Below, piece after piece: positions 1 to 13,766 of a DNA stretch of 64,000 nucleotides (its first letter is position 1; each line of letters starts with the position of its first letter). The notes under the pieces are model-generated. The model did not search any database. It was not told the DNA's origin and saw only the letters and a program-made list of their open reading frames with translations. The position numbers were made by a program, and so were the translations under genes. Location of the stretch: the IMG/VR virus record IMGVR_UViG_3300023174_000036, positions 1 through 64,000 of that record. One strand, written 5' to 3'.

Positions 1-303
1 GATCAGGCCAGCCAGGACAGCCCTACTGACTTACGCATGAACTTTGACTCAGCATGGGCTCCGCCTATTGCGGCCATGGAGAAGTTTCAGGACTTGGGCT
101 TTAAGGTCAAGCTCGTCTATTGGGAATCGGGTATGTGCTTCTGCGGTGTCTTTGATGAGAATGGCGATGACTACTTTGACTACACTGATATGTCAGCAGA
201 CGAAGTGGAAGCCAACATCAACCCAGAGATTGACGAGTGTATGTGCATCGTAGAGAACCTGCGTGAATGGGAAGAAGACAACGCAGAAGAGGAGGAAGAG
301 TAA
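1..303 (+). CDS. DUF1281/YubB-like ferredoxin-fold protein, 5'-truncated by window edge
   Basis: Frame open from base 1; FDSAWAPP...YWESGMCFCG motif; acidic tail. Confidence 0.55.
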   Translation, partial: DQASQDSPTDLRMNFDSAWAPPIAAMEKFQDLGFKVKLVYWESGMCFCGVFDENGDDYFDYTDMSADEVEANINPEIDECMCIVENLREWEEDNAEEEEE

Positions 304-464
304 TGGACTTTTGGACATGGCTTGCTTCCTGCCCAGTGAAGTATGAAGTCGATAGCCTACAGGGCTTTGACGGAGTCAGTGTAGCGTTCTACCCACCCAC
401 AGAGGACGAAGAAGAGAATCAGGAAATTGAGTTGAATCACGGAATTGACAGCATCAATGAATGA
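303..464 (+). CDS. Small acidic hypothetical early protein (MDFWTWL...)
   Basis: ATG overlaps upstream TAA (TAATG). Confidence 0.6.
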   Translation: MDFWTWLASCPVKYEVDSLQGFDGVSVAFYPPTEDEEENQEIELNHGIDSINE

Positions 465-473
465 TAGTATAAT
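445..473 (+). promoter_or_regulatory. sigma70-type early promoter
   Basis: TTGACA 445-450, 17 nt, TATAAT 468-473. Confidence 0.85.
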
Positions 474-502
474 TAACACTTAATAACAACAAAGGTACAG
501 CA

Positions 503-640
503 ATGAAAACCAATCGCGAGAAGAACACGGAGTATGATGCTAAGGCGCAAGCCAGCATCCGCCCCAAAGAACCTGAATACAACTGGAAACCACTCGAAGA
601 AGTCATTCGGCAATGGGTGCTAAAGAATGAGCAGACTTGA
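503..640 (+). CDS. 45-aa hypothetical protein (MKTNREKN...), not in ORF track
   Basis: Follows promoter; AAAGG RBS; ATG 503 to TGA 640. Confidence 0.6.
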   Translation: MKTNREKNTEYDAKAQASIRPKEPEYNWKPLEEVIRQWVLKNEQT

Positions 641-890
641 ACTATTCGGTAGACCCTGGACTGTATTCGATCCTGCTAACAAGGATCACAGAAGGTATTA
701 TCACCAATTTGTCCTAACGGCCAGTTGGGGTGAGTGCCCGGTTAGGTTTGTGGTGCCAGAAGACCACGGCGATTTGGTTACTATGATTCAACGCAGTTTG
801 ATTGCTTACTATGTAAACCGTGAGTTCAAATCAAAGAAACCACCTGCTCCTTTGGTTCGCCAAAAGAGGAAGAAAACGGTTGACAACTAA
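627..890 (+). CDS. Hypothetical protein with basic C-terminus
   Basis: 87-aa ORF overlapping upstream gene end. Confidence 0.65.
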   Translation: MSRLELFGRPWTVFDPANKDHRRYYHQFVLTASWGECPVRFVVPEDHGDLVTMIQRSLIAYYVNREFKSKKPPAPLVRQKRKKTVDN

Positions 891-908
891 CCGAAATAGT
901 TGTATAAT
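880..908 (+). promoter_or_regulatory. sigma70-type early promoter
   Basis: TTGACA 880-885, 17 nt, TATAAT 903-908. Confidence 0.85.
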
Positions 909-963
909 TAGAACATGAACAAGGCGTTCATATTTTTTAACACACACAGAAGAGGTATTTAAA

Positions 964-1329
964 ATGGCTACAGATAAATTGTTTACGGTTGCAGGTATTA
1001 GTAAATTGGATGGCGAGTACAAAGTTCGCTTTGCCAATGATATCATGCGTATCAAGGTGTTGGCAAAACATGGTCACGAAGACATTCGATTGGCTGATCT
1101 CGAGAAGGCAGTTACCAAGCTCGAGGCTGCACAGATGATCTTGACTATGGAAGACTTTGCTGATGCAATTGCCCAGGCAACTATCACAGAGTATCTTGAA
1201 GACAAGACTCCTAAGGCTAAGGTCTCTAAGCCTGTTGCTACCAAAGCAACGAAGACTCCGGTAGCGAAGACTACCAAGGCACCTGCGAAAGCAGTTAAGG
1301 TTACTGAGGACGAAGACGCTCCTTTCTAA
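964..1329 (+). CDS. Hypothetical protein with Lys/Ala/Pro/Thr-rich tail (possible DNA binding)
   Basis: GAGGT RBS; tail KTPKAKVSKPVATKATKTPVAK. Confidence 0.7.
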   Translation: MATDKLFTVAGISKLDGEYKVRFANDIMRIKVLAKHGHEDIRLADLEKAVTKLEAAQMILTMEDFADAIAQATITEYLEDKTPKAKVSKPVATKATKTPVAKTTKAPAKAVKVTEDEDAPF

Positions 1330-1332
1330 GCT

Positions 1333-1524
1333 ATGTCATTCATTCAGTATGAAGTATGGGGTGTGGTGGACGGACGCGATGAACTAGTCGAGTGCGTCCC
1401 CACTCTCAAAGAAGCAGAAGAGATCCTCAAGGCTGAATTTGATTCAAACGAATTCTATACCGAAATGTTTATACTGGAAGACAGGGATGATGTATTGAAA
1501 GAAGTACGAAGACAGGCACACTAG
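1333..1524 (+). CDS. Small acidic hypothetical protein
   Basis: 63-aa ORF 3 nt after upstream stop. Confidence 0.6.
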   Translation: MSFIQYEVWGVVDGRDELVECVPTLKEAEEILKAEFDSNEFYTEMFILEDRDDVLKEVRRQAH

Positions 1525-1529
1525 TTTCA

Positions 1530-1607
1530 GGGCCCCTAGCTCATGTTGGTTAGAGCAGTGGACTCATAATCCATTGGTGCCGTGTTCGACTCACGGGGGG
1601 CCCACCA
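1530..1607 (+). tRNA. tRNA with CAT anticodon, probably Ile2 (lysidine) rather than Met
   Basis: Acceptor GGGCCCC/GGGGCCC, anticodon loop CTCATAA, T loop TTCGACT, encoded CCA; C4-G69/C5-G68 pairs typical of TilS substrates. Confidence 0.9.
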
Positions 1608-1612
1608 TACAT

Positions 1613-1689
1613 CAGCCCTTAGCTCAGTTGGATAGAGCAACAGCCTTCTAAGCTGTAGGCCACTGGTTCGAATCCAGTAGGGCTGGCCA
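1613..1689 (+). tRNA. tRNA-Arg(TCT)
   Basis: Acceptor CAGCCCT/AGGGCTG, anticodon loop CTTCTAA, GGTTCGAATCC, encoded CCA. Confidence 0.95.
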
Positions 1690-1701
1690 ATACCCTGCCA
1701 T

Positions 1702-1730
1702 TTGACAGGGTTTCTTTTTGGTTGTATAAT
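1702..1730 (+). promoter_or_regulatory. sigma70 promoter overlapping the tRNA terminator
   Basis: TTGACA 1702-1707, 17 nt, TATAAT 1725-1730; CCCTG/CAGGG stem plus T-tract 1693-1719. Confidence 0.85.
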
Positions 1731-1758
1731 TGATACATACAACACAACGGAGCCCAAT

Positions 1759-2160
1759 ATGAGCAAGATTCTAAATTTTCGTCCAGTGTGCGTGAATCAT
1801 GGTTGCAACAAGCCAGTGATGCAAAAAGGCGGCACTATTGATAATCCCACTGGCTGGCGAGTGCATTGCGGGCATTGCCAAAAGGCATCATATGGCGGGC
1901 ACGCTCATGCTGTGGGTGTTACTCCATTCAAGACAGGCCAATGCTCAAATCAACAGGGCAAATTGGGATTCTCTTGTGTGATTGATTGGGAATCAGCCAG
2001 CCAGCAAGGATTGGCCATTGCCACTGAGATTGATCACATCAACGGCGACCACATGGATAACAGACTGGTAAATCTGCAGGAACTTTGCCCAGTGTGCCAC
2101 AAAATCAAAGGCCAACGAGAAGGCAACTATGACGGATGGCGCAACTACAGAGCTGGTTGA
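1759..2160 (+). CDS. HNH endonuclease-like zinc-binding protein
   Basis: DHINGDHMDNRLVNLQELCPVCH; extra CxxC pairs; start moved to ATG 1759 after GGAG. Confidence 0.8.
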   Translation: MSKILNFRPVCVNHGCNKPVMQKGGTIDNPTGWRVHCGHCQKASYGGHAHAVGVTPFKTGQCSNQQGKLGFSCVIDWESASQQGLAIATEIDHINGDHMDNRLVNLQELCPVCHKIKGQREGNYDGWRNYRAG

Positions 2161-2185
2161 CACTCTAACCAAAAGGCAGTATAAT
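2157..2185 (+). promoter_or_regulatory. sigma70-type early promoter
   Basis: TTGACA 2157-2162, 17 nt, TATAAT 2180-2185. Confidence 0.85.
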
Positions 2186-2213
2186 TAACACATAAACACA
2201 CACAGGAGCGAAG

Positions 2214-2462
2214 ATGATAGCAGAACAAACCCGCACAGTAGTATTCCAGGGCATCACATACGATGCCACACACGGTGGTCCATTCGATAGAGGCTCAGCA
2301 GACAGCTACTACGGTCGCCCACAAGTTCCCCACAAATACCCCAACGGCACTGGCAATGCTCCACGCATTGAAGCCCCAGAGCTGACCCTAGCAGAGATGC
2401 GCGAGTACTACAGGGGCTATGAGTACAATGAGTGCTTTGGCGACAAGAAAGACTGGGGTTGA
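2214..2462 (+). CDS. Hypothetical early protein (HGGPFDRGSADSYY motif)
   Basis: Own promoter and AGGAGCGAA RBS. Confidence 0.8.
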   Translation: MIAEQTRTVVFQGITYDATHGGPFDRGSADSYYGRPQVPHKYPNGTGNAPRIEAPELTLAEMREYYRGYEYNECFGDKKDWG

Positions 2463-2487
2463 CAGCCCGCCCAAAAGGCAGTATAAT
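2459..2487 (+). promoter_or_regulatory. sigma70-type early promoter
   Basis: TTGACA 2459-2464, 17 nt, TATAAT 2482-2487. Confidence 0.85.
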
Positions 2488-2517
2488 TAACACATAAACA
2501 CACACAGGAGCGAACCT

Positions 2518-2712
2518 ATGCTAGTACACTTTATCAACACCGGACACGGTTTGGACATGGGCGTGAAAGAAGTAGAATGCCAAAGCCTCCGGTTGGACCA
2601 TTCGGATGCACCCTACGCCATCGTAAGCCACCCTTTCCAACCCAACGGATGCTGTAGAGCAGAGCGCAACTATTTCAACGGCGAACTGCAATGGGTGGTT
2701 GACTTCGATTGA
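2518..2712 (+). CDS. Hypothetical early protein
   Basis: Own promoter and AGGAGCGAA RBS. Confidence 0.75.
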   Translation: MLVHFINTGHGLDMGVKEVECQSLRLDHSDAPYAIVSHPFQPNGCCRAERNYFNGELQWVVDFD

Positions 2713-2727
2713 TTTTGGCGCTATAAT
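2699..2727 (+). promoter_or_regulatory. sigma70-type early promoter
   Basis: TTGACT 2699-2704, 17 nt, TATAAT 2722-2727. Confidence 0.8.
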
Positions 2728-2760
2728 ACACACATACACAGCAAATAAGGAGCGAACTTT

Positions 2761-3090
2761 ATGCAACTGCTAATCACTACACAAACACAAGAAAACTACG
2801 GTGCCCACGATTGGGACGGAGTTGGTGAGTGCCCACAGTATTGGAAGTTCAAAGGCGGCCAGGACTACCGGTATGATTTGGGCAAGTTCGGTCGTAGCCA
2901 AGAGGCGCTCACTGAGTTGGTGATGGCCTTGCGTGGCCAGATTGAAGAAGACAATGACTACTACCGCAACCACATCATTGGTTGGGAAGTGGTTGCAGAC
3001 GACTACCTCACTGAGTTCGAACAGAGCCAGTTGGAGTACGAAGGGCGCATTGCCTATCCCGCAACCCGTTTGGAGTTGGAGACTGCATGA
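2761..3090 (+). CDS. Hypothetical early protein (ENYGAHDWDG..ECPQYWKFKGG)
   Basis: Own promoter and AGGAGCGAA RBS. Confidence 0.8.
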   Translation: MQLLITTQTQENYGAHDWDGVGECPQYWKFKGGQDYRYDLGKFGRSQEALTELVMALRGQIEEDNDYYRNHIIGWEVVADDYLTEFEQSQLEYEGRIAYPATRLELETA

Positions 3091-3188
3091 ACGACATCTT
3101 GTATGCGTTCTATATCACTATGGAACTGTGGATCTTCTGCGGTGTCCTGTTGACAGCTTTGGTAATTGAAGCTATAATTACTACTTAA
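3087..3188 (+). CDS. 33-aa hydrophobic peptide (MNDILYAFYITMELWIFCGVLLTALVIEAIITT), not in ORF track
   Basis: ATGA overlap with upstream stop; single TM-like stretch. Confidence 0.45.
   Translation: MNDILYAFYITMELWIFCGVLLTALVIEAIITT
3150..3178 (+). promoter_or_regulatory. sigma70-type early promoter
   Basis: TTGACA 3150-3155, 17 nt, TATAAT 3173-3178. Confidence 0.85.
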
Positions 3189-3212
3189 ACAACACAATAG
3201 GGAGCGACCCAA

Positions 3213-3596
3213 ATGGCTAAAACAAATTATGACAACTTCGCGAGCTTTGACCTTAACGAAGCCTGTGATCACTTTGACTGTACTGATCAAAAGGCCTGGA
3301 AGAAGATCCGTCCTTTCATCGTAGCAGACGGTGAAGAGTACGCAGAGGTCATGGAGAAAGAGTTTGACTTTGAAGAAGTCACCGACACAGACCACATGGT
3401 GTTTGAAGCAGGCGTCAAGTATGCGCTTACCAAAATGAACATTGCACTGGACAAAGCAGGCATAGACGTGCAGGTCTGCGAGGTAGACTTGGTAGAGAGC
3501 ATGGGCTTTATGATGGTCCGTTGCGATGACGAGCCCGAGGACTTTGTAAAACGAGTGCTGAAGAAGCCCGTCATGATGGTTGACAGCTGGGTGTAA
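3213..3596 (+). CDS. Acidic hypothetical early protein
   Basis: Own promoter and GGGAGCGAC RBS. Confidence 0.8.
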   Translation: MAKTNYDNFASFDLNEACDHFDCTDQKAWKKIRPFIVADGEEYAEVMEKEFDFEEVTDTDHMVFEAGVKYALTKMNIALDKAGIDVQVCEVDLVESMGFMMVRCDDEPEDFVKRVLKKPVMMVDSWV

Positions 3597-3608
3597 TCCA
3601 GTTATAAT
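3580..3608 (+). promoter_or_regulatory. sigma70-type early promoter
   Basis: TTGACA 3580-3585, 17 nt, TATAAT 3603-3608. Confidence 0.85.
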
Positions 3609-3643
3609 ACATACTTACACAACACAACATAGGAGCGAAACTT

Positions 3644-3970
3644 ATGATTACAGCAGATCAAATTGCAGTTGGCAAACAACTAGCAGAGCAAGCGTCAGTA
3701 GACATGTACAACCAAATGGGCCGCAAGGATGCATTTGCCTGTGGCTTTGCTTGGGTAGACGTCTACGTGGATCGTACTAACAGCAAGCAGGCTAAGGAAT
3801 TGATTGCCGCAGGCTTTAAGAAGGACTACAAACCAAAATGTCTGAGCATTTGGAATCCAGGCAATTTGCCAGTCCAAAACATCGACATCAAAGAAGCGGG
3901 TGCGGATGCTATGGCCACTTACTTGAGAGGTTTGGGTTTGAATGCCTACAGCGGATCACGTTTAGACTAA
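3644..3970 (+). CDS. Hypothetical early protein (CGFAWV...SRLD)
   Basis: Own promoter and AGGAGCGAA RBS. Confidence 0.8.
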   Translation: MITADQIAVGKQLAEQASVDMYNQMGRKDAFACGFAWVDVYVDRTNSKQAKELIAAGFKKDYKPKCLSIWNPGNLPVQNIDIKEAGADAMATYLRGLGLNAYSGSRLD

Positions 3971-3979
3971 CCAAATGAC

Positions 3980-4008
3980 ATGACACGGAGTCGCCTCCGT
4001 GTTATAAT
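3980..4008 (+). promoter_or_regulatory. sigma70 promoter with palindromic spacer (possible operator)
   Basis: ATGACA-17-TATAAT; ATGACACGGAG-TCGC-CTCCGTGTTAT inverted repeat. Confidence 0.7.
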
Positions 4009-4039
4009 TAATGTATATTAACACGCGAAGGAGCGAACA

Positions 4040-4936
4040 ATGGGTAATAAAGTTGTTACTAGTAAGATGTTGATGGCCCTGCAGAGTGATGTAAAGACTT
4101 TGGAAGTGGACACTACAGCAATTAAGGCCAAAGAAGCGGCATTGAAGAACGAAACAGATGAAGACATTTTGGGTCGTTTGCGTGACCGTTTTGAGATACT
4201 GGACGACATGACTCGTGCAGTCAAAGCAGGCAAGGTACGTGCTATGATTGTAACAGGCCCTCCAGGCGTTGGCAAGAGTTATGGCGTAGAGAATGTACTT
4301 TCAAAGCATGATGTGTTTGCTAACGTAGCACAAGACGAGAAGCTGAAGAAGTACGAAGTGGTTAAAGGTGCTATGTCAGCACTGGGCTTGTACAGCAAGC
4401 TATACCATTACAAGGATGCCAAGAACATCATTGTGTTTGATGACTGTGACTCAGTATTGCTGGACGACTTGAGCTTGAACATTCTCAAGGCAGCTTTGGA
4501 TACAAGCTCCAAGCGCATGATCCATTGGAACACTGACTCACACCTATTGCGTCGTGAAGGCGTGCCAGACAGCTTTGAGTTCAAGGGCGGTGCTATCTTT
4601 ATTACCAATATCAAGTTCGATCACGTTAAGAGCAAGAAGCTCCGCGATCACTTGGAAGCATTAGAGTCACGTTGCCATTACTTGGACTTGACTATTGACA
4701 CCACACGTGAGAAGCTACTACGCATTGAGCAGGTAGTTAACGAGTGTGGCATGTTGGACAAGTATGAGTTTGAAGACTACCAAAAGAGTGAAGTGGTAGA
4801 CTTTGTTAAGGCCAACGTTGACAAGCTACGTGAGCTGAGCTTGCGTACAGTACTTAAGGTAGCTGACTTGAAGCATGGCTTCCCGGACAAGTGGCGGGCA
4901 GTAGCAGAGGTTACATGTATGCGCAACAGCCGCTAG
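4040..4936 (+). CDS. AAA+ / P-loop ATPase
   Basis: Walker A GPPGVGKS, Walker B IIVFDDCD, sensor IFITN, ALESR; AGGAGCGAA RBS. Confidence 0.85.
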   Translation: MGNKVVTSKMLMALQSDVKTLEVDTTAIKAKEAALKNETDEDILGRLRDRFEILDDMTRAVKAGKVRAMIVTGPPGVGKSYGVENVLSKHDVFANVAQDEKLKKYEVVKGAMSALGLYSKLYHYKDAKNIIVFDDCDSVLLDDLSLNILKAALDTSSKRMIHWNTDSHLLRREGVPDSFEFKGGAIFITNIKFDHVKSKKLRDHLEALESRCHYLDLTIDTTREKLLRIEQVVNECGMLDKYEFEDYQKSEVVDFVKANVDKLRELSLRTVLKVADLKHGFPDKWRAVAEVTCMRNSR

Positions 4937-4945
4937 GCTAGTGTG

Positions 4946-5114
4946 TACAGTACAGCAAGCAGCCTACAAGAGCTGTACGCTGTAGCAGTAGGACAAGCTA
5001 GTAGATTCGCTCCCGAACGCTTGCCCATAAACACTAACGCCAACAAGGCAATGGTGTTTGGATCTAGGAACTCGTAAGCCCGATTCGCTCCCGGCTAGTT
5101 CCTAGATTTTTTTT
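4946..5114 (+). ncRNA. Putative structured RNA (four hairpins; two loops with GAUUCGCUCCCG) ending in an intrinsic terminator
   Basis: Stems 4950-4978, 4991-5026, 5029-5059, 5062-5107 followed by T-tract; 12-mer repeated at 5004-5015 and 5082-5093. Confidence 0.65.
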
Positions 5115-5255
5115 GATCGGATTATCGAAAAAGAAAAGCCTCCCGGAGGTTGAGAATACGAAATATTCTGCGAGGGGGGGTCGGGGCATATACATTTACA
5201 ACTGTTGTATTTTTACAACAGCGCATGGAATTTTGGTGGGCATAGGTGCCAAATC

Positions 5256-5860
5256 ACCCCACCAAAAGCATAAGTACTTCTTTATAATTTTTTGCGCAAC
5301 GCCGCTACAGGTACACAGGACCATTTTGGGCATAAATACCACATAGAGGATCCATCATGCCAACACCCATATTACCCACCAAAACACAACTAGCTGGACT
5401 GCAATTCACACCCAAACAGCTGGTAGCAGACAAAACCGTTGAAGAGTATCTCACCATTACCAACAACTATGATTTCATACTCAAACTCATAGCCCAATAC
5501 AGAAGCGGAGCCAGAGCGTCATGGGCGGGTACTGGTGTAACTCCAGATGCATCCACTTATACTGAATTTGTTTATTTTTGTGATCTCCCCACATTGAATC
5601 TATTGATTGAGTATCTCACCAATGTAGACTATGGTTATGGCTATGTTGTGAAAGTGGCCAAAACTTCAGTTGGTTGGGAAACCAGAACCACTGCTATCTC
5701 CGTCACACCCAGTGACAGTTACATACTGCCCACTGGCAACAACGCAGGCAAATACGCACTGTTGGTATCTTGGGCTTAAAAACAACCCCACCAGAACTTC
5801 AAGTACTTCCCAAATTTTTTTTTGCGCCCACAAAAAATGGGCCCTAAAGACCCATTTTGG
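5256..5860 (+). repeat. Imperfect ~75-80 bp direct repeat at 5256-5329 and 5785-5860
   Basis: Shared blocks ACCCCACCA, AAGTACTTC, TTTTTTGCGC, CCATTTTGG in the same order and similar spacing. Confidence 0.75.
5357..5779 (+). CDS. Hypothetical protein, probably late
   Basis: CATAAATA at 5331-5338, GAGGA RBS. Confidence 0.75.
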   Translation: MPTPILPTKTQLAGLQFTPKQLVADKTVEEYLTITNNYDFILKLIAQYRSGARASWAGTGVTPDASTYTEFVYFCDLPTLNLLIEYLTNVDYGYGYVVKVAKTSVGWETRTTAISVTPSDSYILPTGNNAGKYALLVSWA

Positions 5861-5873
5861 TTGTTACTGTGCG

Positions 5874-5945
5874 TTAACGATTCATCACATACATGGTAAT
5901 TTCAAAGCCAAATCGCATTTCTTGTGCTGTTGGTTTAGTCCACAT
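5874..5945 (-). CDS. pqqA: PQQ precursor peptide PqqA (MWTKPTAQEMRFGFEITMYVMNR), not in ORF track
   Basis: 23 aa; MWTKP start, R-x-G-F-E-x-T-x-Y core with the ExxxY Glu/Tyr pair; AGGAGG RBS at 5953-5958. Confidence 0.95.
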   Translation of the reverse strand: MWTKPTAQEMRFGFEITMYVMNR

Positions 5946-6065
5946 GGTAGTTCCTCCTGGTTGATTACGGTTGTACATACTGTTCTTACACTAGTATGTA
6001 TCCGTATAGTAGCACGTATTCACCATGGAACACATAGTGAAAATCATTGATTCACCATAGTGATA

Positions 6066-6425
6066 TTATGGAGCAAAGTCACTGGCAGCTTGTGCTATAC
6101 GCCTGGCTTTAAGCTCATCTTCTTCACCAGTGTTGAGTTTCCCGCTCCATCCTGCCAAACTCAAAAACGGTACTCCCACTCTACTGGCAAAAGCACTGAG
6201 TCCATTCCAAAAGTTTGCGGCTCCATATGTGTTCACCGCATAGTTCAGCACACGCCATTGATCCACAGTCAAATAGGGTTTTAGCTGTGGGGCCGCAGTT
6301 ATAGCACCAGCGGCAACAGCACCAGTCCAATTGCCCTTGCTTATATAGTTCAGTATGGTTCGAATCAACACAGCATTTGCTGTGGCTTTTTCTGGCGCGG
6401 GCTCAGTGATTTCTTTCAGTCTCAT
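6066..6425 (-). CDS. Hypothetical late protein (MRLKEITEP...)
   Basis: Start moved to ATG 6425, 5 nt after TATAAATA (6431-6438). Confidence 0.65.
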   Translation of the reverse strand: MRLKEITEPAPEKATANAVLIRTILNYISKGNWTGAVAAGAITAAPQLKPYLTVDQWRVLNYAVNTYGAANFWNGLSAFASRVGVPFLSLAGWSGKLNTGEEDELKARRIAQAASDFAP

Positions 6426-6707
6426 ACATATATTTATAAGTATACATATGCTGATACCCATTCCGCTAGACCCCATAGCCGTAGACATCATAATAGAGCT
6501 ACTGTTGGAGTCTTTACAGTCATACGGGGCTGGGTGAGCATTAGCACTCATTTCGTGCGTTAACGCTCTGCTACTTCGTAGCTGTAAAAAATCTGCGCTT
6601 CGCGTTTGTTCTAAAATTTTGCGCTGGCGCTTCGCGATACTAAATAATCAGCGGTCCAATTAGTTTGAATCGCATAAATACACTTATAATTAAGGATATA
6701 CGATACA

Positions 6708-7025
6708 ATGAACCCGTTACCAACAACTTATACATTAGGACAGCGTACAATGAATTTTGTGGGTGCGTTGCAAAGTCTTTCTATTCACAGCAAGGAACAC
6801 CAGCACGTGGCACACCGAATTCTAGACAAGGTACATGCACCCAGATATCTTCACACGTTAACGCCAGAAGTGCTGGCCACCATGTACAGAACCATGCTGA
6901 CTGAAGCTGGACTTGATTCAGACTGTGTCACACAGTTCACTGACATTGCTGTGCAAATGAACCTGTTCCGTGATGTGGAAACACTGGATGACAATGTGAC
7001 TCCTTGGGTAGAACCACAGTCCTAA
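6708..7025 (+). CDS. Hypothetical protein
   Basis: CATAAATA 6673-6680 and AAGGA RBS. Confidence 0.65.
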   Translation: MNPLPTTYTLGQRTMNFVGALQSLSIHSKEHQHVAHRILDKVHAPRYLHTLTPEVLATMYRTMLTEAGLDSDCVTQFTDIAVQMNLFRDVETLDDNVTPWVEPQS

Positions 7026-7053
7026 AACCATGCCCGTTCCGCACGGGCATTTT
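7025..7053. terminator. Hairpin between convergent genes
   Basis: ATGCCCGT-TCCGC-ACGGGCAT followed by T residues. Confidence 0.6.
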
Positions 7054-7058
7054 CACCT

Positions 7059-7316
7059 CTAACTCCAGTGCAACAAGAACAGGGTTTTGTTGCGTTCTCG
7101 GCGGAAAGCTATACAGGCCTGCCAGTAATCCACACTGGTGCCGTTGTGATAAGCCCATTCCGAATAGTGATGTCCTATGTATTGATTCAGCCATGCTTCC
7201 ATCTCATCCACTGCTGTGACCCAATCCCATTGATCATTCACAATTATGGTGGGCCATGTGGCATAGGCAATGTGCTCAAACGGATGCAGTTCCGGAAGAT
7301 AAAAGCTTCTTGGCAT
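7059..7316 (-). CDS. Hypothetical Trp-rich protein (MPRSFYLPE...)
   Basis: Start moved to ATG 7316, 5 nt after CTAAATA. Confidence 0.65.
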   Translation of the reverse strand: MPRSFYLPELHPFEHIAYATWPTIIVNDQWDWVTAVDEMEAWLNQYIGHHYSEWAYHNGTSVDYWQACIAFRRERNKTLFLLHWS

Positions 7317-7381
7317 AAAAATATTTAGCCCATACACTAAAAAGTTAAATATCATATACACCAACAAGGATCACGTGCCGT

Positions 7382-7921
7382 ATGACTTTAATAGAATTTC
7401 CGCTTGAAAAATTCATCAACGCTTACCAGTTCAACGGGTCAGAAACCAATGCTGAACTGATAAGATTAATACGCGAGGACGGCGGCAAATTAAGTCAGCA
7501 AACTGTGGTCAAAGCCTACATGACTGATTGGCGCTTGACCATGGATCATCAAAGTCCGTTACTGGATCCTTTCTTCAAGTTTCTCAATGAAGGGTTGTCC
7601 CACAGTATAGCCAGCCTTGCAGGTGTTACCAAAGATCCTTTCAAATATCGCATTGCCAACATTTGGGGAGCAATATACAGCAAGGATGACCACACTGAAG
7701 CACACAGTCACGCACCTTGTCAAATGAGTTTTGTGTACTATGTTCAAGCAGATGACTCAGTATCTGCTCCATTGATATTTCCTGAAATTGAACACACAGT
7801 GATACCCAGCACTGGCATGCTGGTCATATGCCCAGGTTGGCTTACCCATTATGTGCCCAAGTACAATCCAGTCACTGGGCAAGAACGCATAGTTATTGCA
7901 GGCAATATAGAACTACAATGA
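7382..7921 (+). CDS. Putative 2OG-Fe(II) oxygenase
   Basis: HSH...SFVYY...PGWLTHYV...RIVIAGN. Confidence 0.8.
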   Translation: MTLIEFPLEKFINAYQFNGSETNAELIRLIREDGGKLSQQTVVKAYMTDWRLTMDHQSPLLDPFFKFLNEGLSHSIASLAGVTKDPFKYRIANIWGAIYSKDDHTEAHSHAPCQMSFVYYVQADDSVSAPLIFPEIEHTVIPSTGMLVICPGWLTHYVPKYNPVTGQERIVIAGNIELQ

Positions 7922-8475
7922 TAGACAGCACAGCACCAATCAGTTTTAACCTTGGACGATTTGTAAACACATACCAGTTCAGTGATTCTGAAACAATTCA
8001 AGCACTGATAGACACAATTAGGGCAGAAGCTGTGCGTGGCCAAAGACCCAGTAATGTACAGGCTTTGGTCACATGGAATCTTTACAACATTGATCACAAT
8101 GCCCAACCACAGGATAGATTTTTTACTTTTTTAAAAACCAGCCTTGAACACAGTTGGTCCAACTTGCTGTGTGATAACAAGGGCAGTGAATCAGTCAACT
8201 TTCGTATCAGCAGTATGTGGGGAGCAATTTATCAGCCAGGCGATTGGGCAGATTATCACACACACGGGCCCAGCAGAACCAGTTGGGTATATTATTTGCA
8301 AGCTGATCCTACTCAGGGTGCTCCTTTGGTTTTTGATAATACTGGTTATGAAATAATGCCCACCACTGGACAATTGATCATGTTCCCCAGCTGGTTGGGG
8401 CACAGTGTTCCCAAATTTATGCCCAAAGATGCCAGTGAACGCATTGTGCTGGCTGGCAATGTGGAAATACAATGA
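7918..8475 (+). CDS. Putative 2OG-Fe(II) oxygenase, tandem paralogue
   Basis: HTH...SWVYY...FPSWLGHSV...RIVLAGN; ATGA overlap. Confidence 0.8.
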   Translation: MIDSTAPISFNLGRFVNTYQFSDSETIQALIDTIRAEAVRGQRPSNVQALVTWNLYNIDHNAQPQDRFFTFLKTSLEHSWSNLLCDNKGSESVNFRISSMWGAIYQPGDWADYHTHGPSRTSWVYYLQADPTQGAPLVFDNTGYEIMPTTGQLIMFPSWLGHSVPKFMPKDASERIVLAGNVEIQ

Positions 8476-8506
8476 ACATCACGTTGCCTTTGTCAAGACA
8501 GTACAA

Positions 8507-8950
8507 TTAGTCCTTGTGGTAGTAACGGTAGTTCACTGAGGTTTCGTTGGTCTGGTGCACGAGTGCGCCATTCTTGATATGAAAGCGTCGGGCCATTTCA
8601 GTTTGTGGACTCAGTGTAACAATGTCGTTGACTTCACTGTGTTCTTTCAAAATCCAATCAGCAGCCTTTTTGATTAAAGCCGCACCTGCGCCAGGACTGT
8701 AACTCCAAATGGTATAAAACACAGCTACATTTTTGCTCTTGCTGACTGATTTTAAATCTTCTTCGTTCTTGGGGATTTCTGTGAGCCATTGCAAACAAGT
8801 AGCCGCCAGGATCTCTTCCCCTGCTTTGAGTAACAAGATTTCAGCCGCATCGTTGATACGTTGCTCAAGAGGAATATGCGGACGAACTGGATCGTCTTTG
8901 ATTACTCGGGTCAAAGGGTCAGTGATGTCTCTAATGTGGTGCAATTCCAT
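8507..8950 (-). CDS. Hypothetical protein, possible GNAT-like fold
   Basis: FYTIWSY.PGAG..LI and A.RFH.KNGA motifs; ATAAATA 8981-8987. Confidence 0.55.
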   Translation of the reverse strand: MELHHIRDITDPLTRVIKDDPVRPHIPLEQRINDAAEILLLKAGEEILAATCLQWLTEIPKNEEDLKSVSKSKNVAVFYTIWSYSPGAGAALIKKAADWILKEHSEVNDIVTLSPQTEMARRFHIKNGALVHQTNETSVNYRYYHKD

Positions 8951-9019
8951 GATAAGTCCTAGTGTGTATCTTTATATGCGTATTTATTAACAAGTGTGTG
9001 AAATGTTGTTACAACTAGA

Positions 9020-10507
9020 TTACACCAGGTCATCACCCGGCAAACTGTTCAACAATTCACGCAATTTGGTACTGGCCACTTCAGCTTTGATTTTAGGTTT
9101 GGCCAAGTCAAATCCTTCCTTGGGACTTGCCCGCTCCCAAGCAGTTGTGCTGCCAGCTTCTTCGCCTTGTGCAGTTTGTCTTTGCTTGATGCTGTTGAGT
9201 AGCGTTGAACCTGCACTGGCTTGCCCTGAGCCATATGAATCTTCTTGTTCGCAGTCAGTGATACGCAAACTGTCAATGTTGAACTCCAAATCAATCTTTT
9301 GTCCAACACCACTGCTACTACGTGTTTTCATCAGTTGTATTTGATAACGTCCACGTTCACGCATGGCCCTGCTGGTAAAGATACCAAACACGTTATCAGC
9401 TGTCTGGATCTTACTTAATCCGCCTGAAATATGACTGTGGTCAAATTCAATTTCTTCCACAGCTCCACGATTCAACTGCGCCGCAGTGATAAACACACAG
9501 TTCTTTTCCACTGCCAAATTGCGCAGTTCTTCCGACACATACTTGTCTTTGACAAACAAGTTTTCAGCACTGATGCGCTTGCTCAAGGGCATTAACAAGT
9601 CCATGTAGTCTACCAACAGTACATCGACCTTACGGCCCATTTTGATTTCATACTCTTTCAAATAAGCACGAATGTCATTGGCAGTCTTGCCACTGGGCAT
9701 GTATTTGACTTGAAACTGTCCCGACTTCTTGCCAATCATTTTGACTTTCATTTCAACATCGTCAATGTTCTTGAAAATCTCTCTAGTGGCCATACCAGTT
9801 ACCATGGCATCCACACGCATACTCACAAGTTCTTCACTCAACTCAAGTGTTAAGTAAATTACATTATATCCAGCAAGAGCATAGTTGACACCAAGATTAG
9901 CCAGGAATAGGGATTTACCAGCACCGCTACCGCCCGCCCAAATGTTGAGTTCGCCACGATTAAAGCCCCCAAACAACTTGTCATCAACTGCTTTCCAACC
10001 TGTAGATATTTGTCCATTTTTATCCTTAATCCTCATTAGTCTAGCACGGGGATCTTCAAAGTAGTCAGTACCCATGTCTCGTTGCAGGCCAATTTGCACA
10101 GCCGCTTTGATCTTTTCTTCCACTGGTCCATACTCACCTTTTTCCAGCAAGTCGGCTGATTCTAAAATTGCACGTTCAAGACCTTTGTGGCGGGTAAATG
10201 TTTCAAAGTCATTCATCAACCATTCAAAATGTTCTTCCCGTAATTCAGTGGCGGCTTTTAAGTTTGAACCTGTGGCCGCATTTAAAATGTCAGGTGTGGG
10301 CAACACATTGTTCTCACTCACATATTTGGTTAAGAATTCTGCTGGCTCTTGTAGTCTACGGTCAAACAGTTTGCTGTCAAAAATGCTTTGGCAACGCACA
10401 AATGTACCAGCATCTGCCAACATCATTTCCAAATAGACTTTTTGGATTTCATATCCATAGTCTACATTTTGTCTTGCTTTATCTTTGTCTTTGTTGTATT
10501 CACTCAT
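9020..10507 (-). CDS. DnaB-like replicative helicase (T4 gp41-like)
   Basis: GGSGAGKS, LTLELSEE, LLVDYMD, TAAQLNR, MKTR. Confidence 0.95.
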   Translation of the reverse strand: MSEYNKDKDKARQNVDYGYEIQKVYLEMMLADAGTFVRCQSIFDSKLFDRRLQEPAEFLTKYVSENNVLPTPDILNAATGSNLKAATELREEHFEWLMNDFETFTRHKGLERAILESADLLEKGEYGPVEEKIKAAVQIGLQRDMGTDYFEDPRARLMRIKDKNGQISTGWKAVDDKLFGGFNRGELNIWAGGSGAGKSLFLANLGVNYALAGYNVIYLTLELSEELVSMRVDAMVTGMATREIFKNIDDVEMKVKMIGKKSGQFQVKYMPSGKTANDIRAYLKEYEIKMGRKVDVLLVDYMDLLMPLSKRISAENLFVKDKYVSEELRNLAVEKNCVFITAAQLNRGAVEEIEFDHSHISGGLSKIQTADNVFGIFTSRAMRERGRYQIQLMKTRSSSGVGQKIDLEFNIDSLRITDCEQEDSYGSGQASAGSTLLNSIKQRQTAQGEEAGSTTAWERASPKEGFDLAKPKIKAEVASTKLRELLNSLPGDDLV

Positions 10508-10524
10508 ACTTTATTATACGCTCT

Positions 10525-11472
10525 TTAAATTTTAATTGCAATGTGTTTGACAGGAGCCCATCGATATTTCCACTCTCTTTGCTTGGTATGATACAGCACT
10601 GAACCAATTGCACTACTAGGATCTCCGGGATTAGGTAGGCTCCAACAGTACTTAAATCTTGGCTCTACAAACTTTTTATTAGCTGTACTATTCATAGCAC
10701 ATCCGCCCATGTAAACTAAACTATCTGTATCAATTAGTTGTTTAGCTTTGAGCATAACAGCTGATACTTGATCTTCAAACACCTGTTGTACTGCGGCCGC
10801 AATGTCGCATTGATCTTGCAAATTATTAATAGGATAGGGCCAATCTAAAACACCTCTATGTAAGTTACGGGTTAAATTAACTGTGTAATCTATATAACTT
10901 TTAACCTCGGGCAAATATCTTTTGGGGTCACCTTGTTCTGACATTTGTTGTAGCAAATATTCTTGCTTGATTGGTTCTAATCCTATCAGTTGTGTAAACG
11001 CACTATAGAATAATCCTAGACTATGTGGATAACTTCTGCTCCACACTTTTTTTATTTCACCGTGTAGCCCTTCCCAGATAGTTGCACACTCAAACTCTCC
11101 TATTGCATCGAGGACGACAATAGCACAATGATTAAAAGGACTAGTATAGTAACCGGCGGCAGCATGACTTGCATGATGCGGCGTATAAGTGATTGGTGCA
11201 TAGTGTAACCTTATATTATTTAAATATCTTTTAGGTAATACTGACAAATCCATTGCTGTTTTATATTGACCAGCATACACTTGTCTAGCTTTCTTAACCC
11301 AAGGTCTTTCATACCAAAATAATCTATCCGGAGCTCCTTGGTGCAATGCTTCGGTTATTATAGATGTATCAAACTCATCGTCTTTACAAGTAGTCCACGA
11401 AATAAGTGCGCCGTCCTTAAATACGGCTAGACTTGACCCGTGATTAAGAGCGTTTATCCCCCACTGTATCAT
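10525..11472 (-). CDS. Carbamoyltransferase N-terminal (Kae1-like) domain only
   Basis: HHASHAA, DAIGE, SLGLFYS, GGCAMN, PGDPSSAIG; no C-terminal domain. Confidence 0.8.
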   Translation of the reverse strand: MIQWGINALNHGSSLAVFKDGALISWTTCKDDEFDTSIITEALHQGAPDRLFWYERPWVKKARQVYAGQYKTAMDLSVLPKRYLNNIRLHYAPITYTPHHASHAAAGYYTSPFNHCAIVVLDAIGEFECATIWEGLHGEIKKVWSRSYPHSLGLFYSAFTQLIGLEPIKQEYLLQQMSEQGDPKRYLPEVKSYIDYTVNLTRNLHRGVLDWPYPINNLQDQCDIAAAVQQVFEDQVSAVMLKAKQLIDTDSLVYMGGCAMNSTANKKFVEPRFKYCWSLPNPGDPSSAIGSVLYHTKQREWKYRWAPVKHIAIKI

Positions 11473-11582
11473 TTGTAGATAAATGGATCGCGTTTACGTA
11501 ATTCTTCAAGACGTTTTTTGAAACGCTTGCGTTCTTGGTATTTGTACCAAGGTGTAAGTAACCAATTAATTATTTTATTCAT
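11469..11582 (-). CDS. 37-aa basic peptide (MNKIINWLL...RKRDPFIYK), not in ORF track
   Basis: ATGA overlaps at both ends; AAGGAG RBS. Confidence 0.7.
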   Translation of the reverse strand: MNKIINWLLTPWYKYQERKRFKKRLEELRKRDPFIYK

Positions 11583-12547
11583 TCTATCTCCTTAAACCAT
11601 TTCTTTGCTCTCAATTGTATTTTGAGACTGTTTGATTCTTTTGCCGATACAATCAAGTATAATGTAGCCAATCTTCCTAATTTTATCACAGCATCATTTA
11701 CATCTTTAACGCCTTCGGGCCAATCAGGCATACTAACTGACCAGCCGTATTCTAATGCTTGCTCCACAGTCTTAGGACCTTCGTGATCTCTGTCTGGTAC
11801 TAGTATAATTTCCTTGCTTAGTTGTTTAAGCAACCAATTCTGACTGTCCTTTATTTCTGCTCCAAGTAAAGCACATCCATCAATACTTATCGCATCAAAC
11901 GGTCCTTCACAAACAATTACGAAGTTTCGATTGTTTATTTGTCTATCTAAATTAAACACATATCCCGGTTGTTGCTCGCTAATATACTTGGGTTTAACGT
12001 CGCCTATGGCCCGGGCAGTGTATCCTACAATGACATTGTCTTTGAGGAACGGTATAATCAACCGGTTGCTAAAACCTATCTTAGGAGTCCAATAGAAAGG
12101 ATAATCTTCGAGATATAAATTTCTATTTGAAAGATACTCGAGTACAGGAACTAACTTGTCCGGGATATGGTTTAAACTGGAAATGAGTTCACTATCAGGC
12201 GGTAATTCACGTGGTTCAAACTTAGGTATAACACTACGTATTACTGTATTTGTATTGTCATTTAATCTAAGAGCTTCTAGACGTAATTGATTTATAATGT
12301 CGTCACTCATGTTGAGTAATCGCATTAACTTATTCATCTTTTGACTAATTGCTCTGCCAGGTTGCCAACTGGCTTTGAACTGGCAATTAAAACAATGATA
12401 GCTGACAGCATCACCGGCATTGACGATAAAACCGCCACGTTGGCGTTTATCATCACAGCAAGGGGCATTAAAACTTATCCAACCGCTTGGAGTTTGTTTT
12501 CGCTTACCTGGTAAGTGTTGTAATAGTGTGTCGGCTATGAGGCTCAT
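11579..12547 (-). CDS. DNA primase (T4 gp61-like)
   Basis: Zn finger PCC...HCFNC; TOPRIM VCEGPFDA, PDRD, KDVND. Confidence 0.92.
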   Translation of the reverse strand: MSLIADTLLQHLPGKRKQTPSGWISFNAPCCDDKRQRGGFIVNAGDAVSYHCFNCQFKASWQPGRAISQKMNKLMRLLNMSDDIINQLRLEALRLNDNTNTVIRSVIPKFEPRELPPDSELISSLNHIPDKLVPVLEYLSNRNLYLEDYPFYWTPKIGFSNRLIIPFLKDNVIVGYTARAIGDVKPKYISEQQPGYVFNLDRQINNRNFVIVCEGPFDAISIDGCALLGAEIKDSQNWLLKQLSKEIILVPDRDHEGPKTVEQALEYGWSVSMPDWPEGVKDVNDAVIKLGRLATLYLIVSAKESNSLKIQLRAKKWFKEIE

Positions 12548-12559
12548 AGCACATTATAC

Positions 12560-13366: not shown

Positions 13367-13391
13367 TTGGACGGACCTTTATATACTATTT

Positions 13392-13766
13392 ATGGCAAAA
13401 CTACGAGACAATATAGAACAACAACTACCCTTTATCAGCGTGTTAAACTACGGTGAAAACGAATACGTGGGTATCATTATAAATCAAGATCAGTTTGTTA
13501 CTAGTTTCTATGATCTAAATGCTATTCGTACACCAGAAGAAAAATCTCAATTTTTAATTATTGGCGAAGCATGGTGGTGGGAATCAAATCGACAATTTCC
13601 AATTAATATATTCTGTAGAGAACAGATATATCCATTTCAGTATGCTATCAAGACTTTTAACAGCAAAGATACACGAATATTACTTGGTCCGTGTGTTAAT
13701 TTAATGAATTTAACTGTTAAACGTGTTAAACGTAAGAGTGTACAGTTAGTCCGTAAGGTTCGTTAA
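13392..13766 (+). CDS. Hypothetical protein
   Basis: 124-aa ORF filling divergent gap. Confidence 0.7.
   Translation: MAKLRDNIEQQLPFISVLNYGENEYVGIIINQDQFVTSFYDLNAIRTPEEKSQFLIIGEAWWWESNRQFPINIFCREQIYPFQYAIKTFNSKDTRILLGPCVNLMNLTVKRVKRKSVQLVRKVR

What the first reader, a model, noticed from the sequence alone, without database searches (positions are those of the whole stretch)
5874..6014. Hidden phage-encoded pqqA (PQQ precursor peptide), below the ORF-track cutoff
Seen: minus-strand AGGAGG RBS, then MWTKPTAQEMRFGFEITMYVMNR. Upstream are a leader hairpin (TACATACT/AGTATGTA, ~5975-6000) and an extended -10-like TGcTACTAT (6006-6014). Established: PqqA is the RiPP substrate whose ExxxY Glu and Tyr are cross-linked by PqqE to make PQQ, the cofactor of methanol (MxaF/XoxF) and other dehydrogenases. 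One peptide is consumed per cofactor. No pqqBCDE is in the window. Inference: this is an auxiliary metabolic gene that supplies only the stoichiometric substrate to the host pathway. The EMRFGFE.TMYVMN variant resembles Methylophilaceae PqqA and suggests a methylotroph host. Phage pqqA may already have been noted in freshwater viromes, so novelty needs checking.
Basis: partly seen in the sequence, partly recalled or inferred. Interest (0 to 1): 0.82.

Follow-up and report, generated by a model that had tools for sequence, protein, structure and literature searches.

The report
Jumbo phage carries PQQ precursor gene
A 356-kb freshwater phage carries a genuine 23-codon copy of pqqA, the peptide that methanol-eating bacteria use up to make the cofactor PQQ; phage pqqA was first reported in 2020, so this is a new example, not a new idea.

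Summary
On the minus strand, 5945-5874 encodes MWTKPTAQEMRFGFEITMYVMNR. An AGGAGG lies 7 nt upstream and a hairpin plus T-run terminator lies downstream. The peptide passes both curated PqqA models (Pfam 39.5 bits against a cut-off of 21.1; TIGR02107 37.9 against 20). The window is part of a 356,312-bp IMG/VR contig from a contractile-tailed jumbo phage. No pqqB-E and no PQQ dehydrogenase is in the window. The EMRFGFE(V/I)TMY core is essentially confined to Methylophilaceae among GTDB species genomes. It also occurs in at least 120 IMG/VR viral contigs and in six cultured methylophage isolates, where it is unannotated or overlaid by an ORF called on the wrong strand. Viral copies are under purifying selection like host copies (pN/pS 0.27 against 0.29). 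A lake metatranscriptome contig spans 5831-6012, which matches the predicted unit. Independent DNA assemblies bridge the gene to both phage flanks. The claimed extended -10 is not better than chance. The idea is published (Coutinho et al. 2020, Lake Baikal VP_266), so this is a new member of a known kind. The added point is that the gene is common, and routinely missed, in methylophages.

The parts
5874..5945 (-). pqqA coding sequence: 23 codons plus TAA, peptide MWTKPTAQEMRFGFEITMYVMNR. Glu15 and Tyr19 form the E-x-x-x-Y pair that is cross-linked in PQQ biogenesis.
   Evidence: Sequence read. PF08042 39.5 bits (cut-off 21.1). TIGR02107 equivalog 37.9 bits (cut-off 20). It is the only such motif in the window.
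5953..5958 (-). Shine-Dalgarno AGGAGG, 7 nt upstream of the ATG.
   Evidence: An SD-like motif is present upstream of 116 of 116 viral and 110 of 111 host copies.
5974..6000 (-). Leader stem-loop: 8-bp arms TACATACT / AGTATGTA with an 11-nt loop. It would lie at or near the 5' end of the transcript. A role in mRNA stability is inferred, not shown.
   Evidence: -9.0 kcal/mol, z -2.75. The 63-nt leader segment has z -3.4, against medians of -1.05 for viral and -1.28 for host loci. Not conserved in sequence in other phages.
6006..6014 (-). Candidate extended -10 (TGcTACTAT), 60 nt upstream of the ATG. Weak evidence.
   Evidence: Located. Not called by the promoter scan. The motif class is not enriched upstream of pqqA genes, but host TATAAT-like hexamers peak 50-59 nt upstream of the ATG, a similar distance. 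The RNA-library contig reaches 6012.
5832..5858 (-). Intrinsic terminator: stem AAAATGGGTC / GGCCCATTTT, then a T-run ending at 5832. It lies between pqqA and the convergent gene 5357-5779.
   Evidence: Region fold -17.3 kcal/mol, z -2.4. Own scan gave -10.4 kcal/mol for the stem followed by T-run. The RNA-library contig ends at 5831. Terminator-like sites follow 66 of 116 viral and 102 of 111 host copies.
5831..6012 (.). Extent of the metatranscriptome contig that covers the pqqA unit (depth 6.6). Contigs carry no strand.
   Evidence: read-laying run X9, record 26. In the same run, 4000-4667 and 6338-7673 have zero depth. DNA run X2 from the same study is nearly flat (mostly 4-9x).

Best explanation
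This is a functional, independently expressed pqqA gene carried by a large lytic-type (jumbo, contractile-tailed) phage of freshwater Methylophilaceae. It is a monocistronic mini-gene with its own ribosome-binding site and terminator, and probably its own promoter. It has the same architecture as the 3-12 'orphan' pqqA copies that Methylophilaceae keep beside a single pqqBCDEFG set. During infection the phage transcript would supply PqqA peptide. The host's PqqD/PqqE would cross-link Glu15 to Tyr19, and the host peptidases, PqqB and PqqC would finish PQQ. Each PQQ molecule consumes one peptide while the enzymes are re-used. The precursor is therefore the one part of the pathway whose supply would fail first if host transcription declines during infection. 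By providing it, the phage would keep PQQ, and so periplasmic methanol/alcohol dehydrogenase activity and energy supply, going through the latent period. This resembles the logic of cyanophage psbA. Shown: family membership, phage location, absence of the rest of the pathway nearby, Methylophilaceae-type sequence, purifying selection, recurrence in many phages, and presence in an RNA library. Inferred: processing by host enzymes, the effect on PQQ level, and a benefit to the phage.
For: Identity: both curated PqqA models are passed at about twice the cut-off, and E-x-x-x-Y is intact. Phage context: hallmark genes; TerL is 53% identical to PA5oct-type jumbo phages; 100% match to a 356,312-bp IMG/VR contig. 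Not a chimera: contigs from three independent DNA runs bridge pqqA to both flanks (X2 5700-6442, X3 5469-6307, X5 5237-6800). Precursor only: no pqqB-E in the window or beside any of 120 viral pqqA loci, against 27 of 120 host loci. No PqqC or PqqE relatives were found in IMG/VR. No PQQ dehydrogenase is in the window or in genuine phage records. Host type: the core motif is found almost only in Methylophilaceae genomes, and the two commonest peptide variants are identical in viruses and hosts. Selection: 108 distinct viral CDS give pS 0.51 and pN 0.14, so pN/pS is 0.27 at codons the search did not constrain, against 0.29 in hosts. Recurrence: six cultured methylophage isolates whose records span Kyanoviridae, Zobellviridae and unclassified Caudoviricetes. 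Expression: an RNA-library contig spans 5831-6012 within a very uneven RNA profile. Host logic: Methylophilaceae have 3-12 pqqA copies but one pqqBCDEFG set (PMC4109929). In a methylotrophic PQQ-overproducing mutant (strain FJNU-A26), pqqA1 and pqqA3 transcripts were about 3.5- and 4.3-fold above wild type at the peak of PQQ synthesis (PMC9851590).
Against: No experiment shows that a phage PqqA is processed or that PQQ rises in infected cells. PQQ is a stable cofactor, so it is not obvious that new synthesis is needed within one infection cycle. The window's peptide has Ile between the cross-linked residues (E-I-T-M-Y). All 124 host copies sampled have Val, and Ile occurs in only 3 viral copies. 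This is a conservative change, but it is untested. The RNA evidence is unstranded, comes from assembled contigs of one run, and cannot formally exclude DNA carry-over. Only 64 kb of the 356-kb genome could be read. The scans for pqqC, pqqE and a dehydrogenase elsewhere rest on short exact peptide patterns and would miss divergent versions. The host is inferred, not demonstrated.
Confidence: 0.75

Rival explanations
1. Neutral passenger. A scrap of host DNA was picked up recently and has no selected role in the phage.
For: Host and viral peptides are often identical. The gene sits at different positions in related phages, as expected for recently moved DNA. Only 66 of 116 viral copies keep a terminator-like site, against 102 of 111 in hosts.
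Against: Viral copies show saturating synonymous divergence with the peptide conserved (pN/pS 0.27, like hosts). All 116 keep an SD. The gene recurs in at least 120 viral contigs and six isolates from sea and lakes. The window's CDS is at most 87.5% identical in DNA to any other copy and 84.7% to the nearest host copy, so it is not a recent capture.
Confidence: 0.08
2. A decoy, or a peptide with another role. The phage peptide would occupy PqqD/PqqE to shut PQQ synthesis down, or would act as a small regulatory peptide unrelated to PQQ.
For: The window's variant has an unusual Ile16 and Gln8. No pathway enzymes accompany it. Nothing here measures the product.
Against: Most phage peptides are residue-for-residue identical to host PqqA, so they should be ordinary substrates. 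The selective constraint matches that on host copies. Blocking energy metabolism would not obviously help a phage that needs host energy.
Confidence: 0.08
3. A recombination or attachment-site homology. The phage would keep a pqqA-like stretch as a target for integration into the host's many pqqA copies, as temperate phages do with tRNA genes.
For: Hosts have many dispersed copies. In Venkman, MEP301, P19250A and MW202481 the gene lies near recombination genes such as ERF, YqaJ and a recombinase.
Against: Attachment needs DNA identity. Here conservation is at the amino-acid level, with free synonymous change. The complete gene with SD and start codon is kept, not a 3' fragment. No integrase was found among the window ORFs scanned.
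Confidence: 0.04
4. An assembly chimera. Host DNA would have been joined to a phage contig by mis-assembly at a repeated pqqA sequence.
For: Other pqqA copies are present in the same lake samples and cause contig breaks inside the gene in run X2 (loose ends at 5889 and 5921).
Against: Contigs from three independent runs and studies run through pqqA into phage sequence on both sides without mismatches. The IMG/VR contig agrees with them.
Confidence: 0.01

Closest known systems
Viral PqqA of Lake Baikal population VP_266 (Coutinho et al. 2020, Microbiome 8:163; PMC7678222)
   Same: A PqqA precursor peptide encoded by a large T4-like freshwater phage assigned to Methylophilaceae, and interpreted as an auxiliary metabolic gene that boosts PQQ for methanol oxidation.
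   Different: VP_266/VP_139 were reported with a viral methanol dehydrogenase, radical SAM and SAM-cycle genes, at 35% GC. This window is about 41% GC, belongs to a 356-kb contig whose terminase is closest to PA5oct-type jumbo phages, and holds no dehydrogenase in the 64 kb readable.
Orphan pqqA copies of Methylophilaceae (3-12 per genome; Beck et al. 2014, PMC4109929)
   Same: Same peptide class (EMRFGFEVTMY core), the same 23-aa length, and the same mini-gene layout with SD and terminator, away from pqqBCDE. 97 of 124 sampled host copies have no pqqB-E in the fetched locus.
   Different: This copy sits in a phage genome between phage genes. It has Ile16, Gln8 and Arg23, a combination not seen in any sampled host copy. 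Its DNA is only 84.7% identical to the nearest host copy.
pqqA in cultured methylophages: Venkman, Melnitz, MEP301, MEP401/402, P19250A
   Same: 78-83% identical peptides, each a stand-alone small gene in a phage that lacks the rest of the pathway.
   Different: Those phages have 35-44 kb genomes, or 141 kb for the Kyanoviridae myovirus Melnitz. Their records leave the gene unannotated or call an ORF on the opposite strand. The Melnitz paper does not list it among its AMGs.
Cyanophage psbA (D1 protein): analogy only, from general knowledge
   Same: The phage supplies the one rapidly consumed component of a host energy-generating system and relies on the host for everything else.
   Different: An unrelated protein and pathway. 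D1 is a turnover-prone enzyme subunit, whereas PqqA is a sacrificial substrate. The psbA effect has been shown experimentally and the pqqA effect has not.

Membership tests
PqqA (PF08042 / TIGR02107), PQQ precursor peptide | Scores above the curated family thresholds. | tested here: met
   PF08042 39.5 bits against 21.1, covering the full model 1-19. TIGR02107 (equivalog) 37.9 bits against 20, model 1-21 of 21.
PqqA (PF08042 / TIGR02107), PQQ precursor peptide | Conserved Glu and Tyr spaced E-x-x-x-Y, the atoms that become PQQ, in a peptide of about 20-40 residues. | tested here: met
   Glu15-Ile-Thr-Met-Tyr19 in a 23-aa peptide. Ile replaces the Val found in all 124 sampled host copies.
PqqA (PF08042 / TIGR02107), PQQ precursor peptide | Located immediately upstream of pqqB in a pqqABCDE operon. 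This is the typical context, but it is not required in Methylophilaceae. | tested here: not met
   No pqqB-E in the window. The same holds for 97 of 124 sampled host copies and for the orphan copies described in PMC4109929, so this does not exclude membership.
PqqA (PF08042 / TIGR02107), PQQ precursor peptide | Bound by PqqD, cross-linked by PqqE and converted to PQQ. | not testable with these tools
   Needs complementation or an in vitro assay. No solved structure chain matches the peptide.
Phage auxiliary metabolic gene (AMG) | Lies inside a genuine viral genome with viral genes on both sides, and is not an assembly artefact. | tested here: met
   Hallmark genes. IMG/VR 356-kb viral contig. 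Bridging contigs from three independent DNA runs.
Phage auxiliary metabolic gene (AMG) | Homologue of a host metabolic gene, kept under selection in phages. | tested here: met
   Host-type peptide. pN/pS 0.27 across 108 distinct viral CDS.
Phage auxiliary metabolic gene (AMG) | Expressed during infection. | tested here: inconclusive
   A metatranscriptome contig at 5831-6012, depth 6.6, with silent stretches nearby. It is unstranded, from one run, and the infection state is unknown.
Phage auxiliary metabolic gene (AMG) | Changes host metabolism to the phage's benefit. | not testable with these tools
   Needs PQQ and dehydrogenase measurements in infected cells and a phage deletion mutant.

The most novel reading that the evidence does not exclude
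pqqA may be the signature auxiliary gene of phages that infect Methylophilaceae methylotrophs. Unrelated phage types would have acquired it repeatedly: small siphoviruses and podoviruses, a T4-like myovirus and a 356-kb jumbo phage, in both sea and lakes. It would be maintained because precursor supply, not enzyme capacity, limits PQQ-dependent energy metabolism in infected cells. It has stayed largely invisible because a 23-codon gene falls below the minimum gene length that I recall for common gene callers (an explanation from memory, not tested here). If so, it is a ready marker for assigning uncultured phages to methylotroph hosts, and the first case of a phage feeding a RiPP pathway with substrate alone.
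Probability: 0.45. Interest if true: 0.65.

Novelty: new member of a known kind. Interest (0 to 1): 0.5.

Why it matters
Methylophilaceae (OM43, LD28, Methylotenera) are major consumers of methanol in oceans and lakes, and their energy metabolism depends on PQQ-dependent dehydrogenases. A phage gene that props up PQQ supply would tie viral infection directly to one-carbon turnover. The practical gain here is smaller but concrete. The gene is present and overlooked in every group of cultured methylophage that the search hit, so the hypothesis can be tested now in existing phage-host pairs. The Methylophilaceae-specific peptide core also gives a simple host marker for metagenomic phages, including this jumbo phage. 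Finally, it warns that standard annotation misses, or calls on the wrong strand, very short auxiliary genes.

Tried and rejected
That pattern fixes the core motif.

(2) The 'Acinetobacter phage MD-2021a' hits looked at first like phages carrying a whole pqq operon. They are bacterial chromosome contigs (ppk, pqqBCDE, gcd) filed as phage, and I used them only as a control and a probe source.

(3) Clustering the viral loci by shared flanking genes, to count independent acquisitions, collapsed 111 of 119 loci into one mosaic network. I abandoned it as a lineage count.

(4) PHROGs has no family for the peptide or its immediate neighbours, and no PDB chain matches the peptide.

(5) The extended -10 was tested comparatively and is not enriched. 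The sigma-70 scan found nothing upstream of pqqA.

(6) The repeated ATGGTGAAT upstream occurs only twice in the window. That count alone is reached in 21 of 100 shuffles, so I record it only as an observation.

23 residues with a near-invariant core carry too little signal, so I give nearest-neighbour identities instead.

(8) The rest of the 356-kb contig could not be read. Scans of IMG/VR for PqqC, PqqE and a PQQ dehydrogenase found no relatives anywhere, but they depend on exact short peptide patterns.

Full report
OBSERVATION.
- ATG at 5945 opens a 23-codon frame, MWTKPTAQEMRFGFEITMYVMNR, closed by TAA at 5876-5874.
- AGGAGG lies at 5958-5953, 7 nt upstream of the ATG.
- The arms TACATACT (6000-5993) and AGTATGTA (5981-5974) form a stem-loop of -9.0 kcal/mol, z -2.75 against dinucleotide shuffles.
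- TGCTACTAT lies at 6014-6006.
A GC-containing stem (5858-5834) runs into a T-run that ends at 5832, and the region folds at -17.3 kcal/mol.
- The mechanical ORF list gives a 34-aa version starting at 5978. That ATG lies inside the hairpin arm, has no SD, and is not used by any homologue. The 23-aa form is therefore the gene.

WHAT IT IS. The peptide passes both curated PqqA models at about twice their thresholds. Pfam PF08042 gives 39.5 bits against 21.1. NCBIfam TIGR02107, an equivalog model, gives 37.9 bits against 20. Glu15 and Tyr19 have the E-x-x-x-Y spacing of the residues that become PQQ. PHROGs has no family for it, and no PDB chain matches it.

WHERE IT SITS.
- Phage identity. The window encodes a T4-type large terminase, a tail sheath, a gp15-like sheath stabiliser, a DnaB-type helicase, a primase-like Toprim protein, a UvsX/RecA-like recombinase and an SNF2-type helicase. 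The terminase is 53% identical to PA5oct-type Pseudomonas jumbo phages, and the next best hits are other phages of 349-469 kb.
- Source contig. A 1,165-base stretch held for IMG/VR contig UViG_3300023174_000036 (356,312 bp) is 100% identical to window 5206-6370. The window is therefore part of a jumbo phage genome.
- Not a chimera. Contigs from three independent DNA runs, from different studies, run through pqqA into both flanks (5700-6442, 5469-6307 and 5237-6800).
- Distribution. The phage is found in lake and freshwater metagenomes from several studies dated 2013-2025, and more weakly in wastewater runs.
- Neighbours. pqqA is convergent with an unknown 140-aa gene (5357-5779, plus strand) and lies downstream of an unknown 161-aa gene (6066-6551, minus strand). 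Neither has a Pfam or PHROG match.

PRECURSOR ONLY.
- tblastn with PqqB, PqqC, PqqD and PqqE probes finds nothing in the window.
- Pfam on 40 window ORFs of 102-1906 aa finds no PQQ enzyme or dehydrogenase.
- A host PQQ-dependent alcohol dehydrogenase (L128; PF01011, 273 bits) has no match in the window.
- None of 120 viral pqqA loci has pqqB-E nearby, against 27 of 120 host loci.
- Profile-derived scans of IMG/VR for PqqC and PqqE found no confirmed relative.
- No genuine phage record holds a PQQ dehydrogenase.
- These scans use short exact peptide patterns, and the other 292 kb of this genome could not be read. 'Precursor only' is therefore firm for the window and for the neighbourhoods of viral pqqA, and probable for the whole genome.

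WHOSE PEPTIDE.
- A degenerate DNA pattern for EMRFGFE(V/I)TMY hit at least 120 loci in GTDB species genomes. Almost all the titles shown are Methylotenera, Methylophilus, Methylobacillus, Methylovorus, Methylopumilus, or unclassified Methylophilaceae and Burkholderiales. Many genomes hold several copies.
- The same pattern hit at least 120 IMG/VR viral contigs.
- The two commonest peptide variants are identical in viruses and hosts.
- The window's own combination (Thr6, Gln8, Ile16, Arg23) occurs only in its own contig. Ile16 is absent from all 124 host copies.
- Its nearest CDS is viral (L108, 87.5% nt), and the nearest host copy is 84.7% identical.
- The control, a chromosomal Acinetobacter pqqA upstream of pqqB, is only 54.5% identical.
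- The Methylophilaceae host call is thus well supported, but it remains an inference.

IS IT MAINTAINED AND EXPRESSED.
- Selection. Among 108 distinct viral coding sequences, the codons left free by the search pattern give pS 0.51, pN 0.14 and pN/pS 0.27. Host copies give 0.29. Selection therefore acts on the peptide, not on DNA identity.
- Signals. All 116 viral copies with enough flank have an SD-like motif, and 66 have a terminator-like site, against 102 of 111 in hosts.
- RNA evidence. In a lake metatranscriptome (X9), coverage of this 5-kb stretch is very uneven. It is zero at 4000-4667 and 6338-7673, 25.7x over the convergent gene (contig 5128-5807), and 6.6x in a contig spanning 5831-6012. 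That contig runs from the end of the terminator T-run to the -10 candidate. A further contig at 3.7x (5997-6260) extends into the upstream gene. DNA run X2 from the same study is nearly flat, mostly 4-9x. This fits a short pqqA transcript of about 180 nt, possibly with some read-through from upstream. But the contigs are unstranded and come from a single run.

THE REGULATORY DETAILS.
- The TGnTAnnnT motif class is not enriched upstream of pqqA genes: 17 of 116 viral loci against 15.7 expected, and 10 of 116 host loci against 10.3. The promoter scan called nothing there.
- In favour of the -10 candidate is its position only. It lies 60 nt from the ATG, where host TATAAT-like hexamers also cluster at 50-59 nt, and it lies at the edge of the RNA contig.
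- Leader structure is a mild general tendency, with median z of -1.05 for viral loci and -1.28 for host loci. This window's leader is at the strong end, z -3.4.
- If transcription starts just downstream of 6006, the hairpin would be 5'-terminal. A stabilising role is plausible but untested.

MECHANISM. From established PQQ biochemistry, PqqD presents PqqA to the radical-SAM enzyme PqqE, which links Glu to Tyr. Peptidases, PqqB and PqqC then complete the cofactor. One peptide is consumed per PQQ, and the enzymes turn over. Methylophilaceae already meet this demand by gene dosage, with 3-12 pqqA copies against one pqqBCDEFG set (PMC4109929). In a methylotrophic PQQ-overproducing mutant (strain FJNU-A26), pqqA1 and pqqA3 transcripts were about 3.5- and 4.3-fold above wild type at the peak of PQQ synthesis (PMC9851590). 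A phage copy under phage control would keep the sacrificial substrate coming if host transcription falls during infection, and so sustain the dehydrogenase-driven energy supply. That last step is inference.

RIVALS.
- A neutral passenger is hard to reconcile with host-like purifying selection and with recurrence in many phages.
- An attachment-site remnant would need DNA identity, and would not need a complete gene with an SD.
- A decoy role is unlikely when most phage peptides are identical to host ones.
- Chimerism is excluded by the bridging contigs.

WHAT IS KNOWN.
- Coutinho et al. 2020 (PMC7678222) reported PqqA in Lake Baikal population VP_266. That is a T4-like, 35% GC virus assigned to Methylophilaceae. 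It was reported together with a viral methanol dehydrogenase and proposed as an AMG.
- A 2026 reservoir study lists viral pqqA, pqqD and pqqE among phosphorus-related AMGs (PMC13188868).
- No other paper in the held library links PqqA to methylotroph viruses.
- The concept is therefore published, and this is a new member in a different and much larger phage.

WHAT SEEMS NOT TO HAVE BEEN SAID. The gene is present in all six cultured methylophage isolates returned by tblastn: Venkman, Melnitz (four records), MEP301, MEP401/402 and P19250A. It is also in a Manatee Spring podovirus genome. The site is unannotated in the Venkman, MEP301, MEP402 and P19250A records inspected and in the MEP401 hit. 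In Melnitz (gene 152) and MW202481 (UOF77531.1) it is overlaid by an ORF called on the opposite strand. The Melnitz paper lists mazG, phoH and hsp20 as AMGs and mentions PQQ only as a medium supplement. In relatives of this jumbo phage (L108 and L033; 71-82% amino-acid identity in the UvsX block) pqqA lies beside that block, not 14 kb away as here. The gene therefore moves as a small cassette.

VERDICT. Novelty is limited to a new host phage type and to how common, and how often missed, the gene is. Interest is moderate, at 0.5.

Noticed in passing
L001 (Melnitz MZ577097.1) 3001-3066; L003 (MW202481.1) 2001-2069; L002, L004, L005, L006: pqqA is missed in the deposited annotation of cultured methylophages. 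In Melnitz (gene 152, QZI94879.1) and MW202481 (UOF77531.1) an ORF is called on the opposite strand over it. In the Venkman, MEP402, MEP301 and P19250A records the site carries no feature.
   Followed up: yes
L007 (CAKLQF020000010.1 105210-111275) and hits H43-H50: Records named 'Acinetobacter phage MD-2021a' in the phage collection are bacterial chromosome contigs (ppk, pqqBCDE, several gcd genes). They are not phage genomes and could mislead AMG surveys.
   Followed up: partly
window 5357-5779 (+): This unknown 140-aa gene, convergent with pqqA, has the highest depth in the lake metatranscriptome run over this stretch (25.7x; contig 5128-5807). It has no Pfam or PHROG match.
   Followed up: partly
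window 6018-6063 (-): Two interleaved short direct repeats lie in the 120-nt spacer upstream of pqqA: TCACTATG at 6063-6056 and 6040-6033, and ATGGTGAAT at 6058-6050 and 6026-6018. These are the only two ATGGTGAAT sites in the window. They may be a phage promoter or operator, or chance.
   Followed up: partly
window 7382-7921 (+), 7918-8475 (+), 15760-16404 (-): Three paralogous PF13759 putative 2OG-Fe(II) oxygenase genes, two of them in tandem about 1.4 kb from pqqA.
   Followed up: no
window 10525-11472 (-) and 48429-50135 (-): Two carbamoyltransferase-family genes (PF02543; the second also has PF16861 at 206 bits) in one phage window. Their substrate is unknown.
   Followed up: no
window 1530-1607 and 1613-1689 (+): Adjacent tRNA-Met(CAT) and tRNA-Arg(TCT). 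This pair is the only part of the first 12 kb with nucleotide similarity to known phages (T4-like Enterobacter and Acinetobacter phages, 77-85%).
   Followed up: no
window 58213-63933 (-) and 41525-45019 (-): Very large ORFs of 1906 aa and 1164 aa with no Pfam match at E <= 0.001.
   Followed up: no
L128 1373-3130 (-) and 3721-3753 (-): In a Burkholderiales MAG, an orphan pqqA copy lies about 600 bp from a PQQ-dependent alcohol dehydrogenase gene (PF01011, 273 bits). This is a host arrangement that pairs the precursor with a consumer enzyme.
   Followed up: partly
L108 1088-4644; L033 862-3985; window 19664-22742: Two other pqqA-bearing viral contigs encode proteins 71-82% identical to the window's UvsX/RecA-like block, with pqqA directly beside it. 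In the window pqqA is 14 kb away.
   Followed up: partly
window 1-10000 versus 10001-22000: GC content is 44-48% in the first 10 kb, which includes pqqA, and drops to 34-40% over the next 12 kb. The pqqA CDS itself is 36% GC.
   Followed up: no
window 8507-8950 (-): A 147-aa protein with a marginal match to the malonyl-CoA decarboxylase C-terminal domain (PF05292; 24.0 bits against a cut-off of 23.2). L120 has a homologue near its own pqqA.
   Followed up: no
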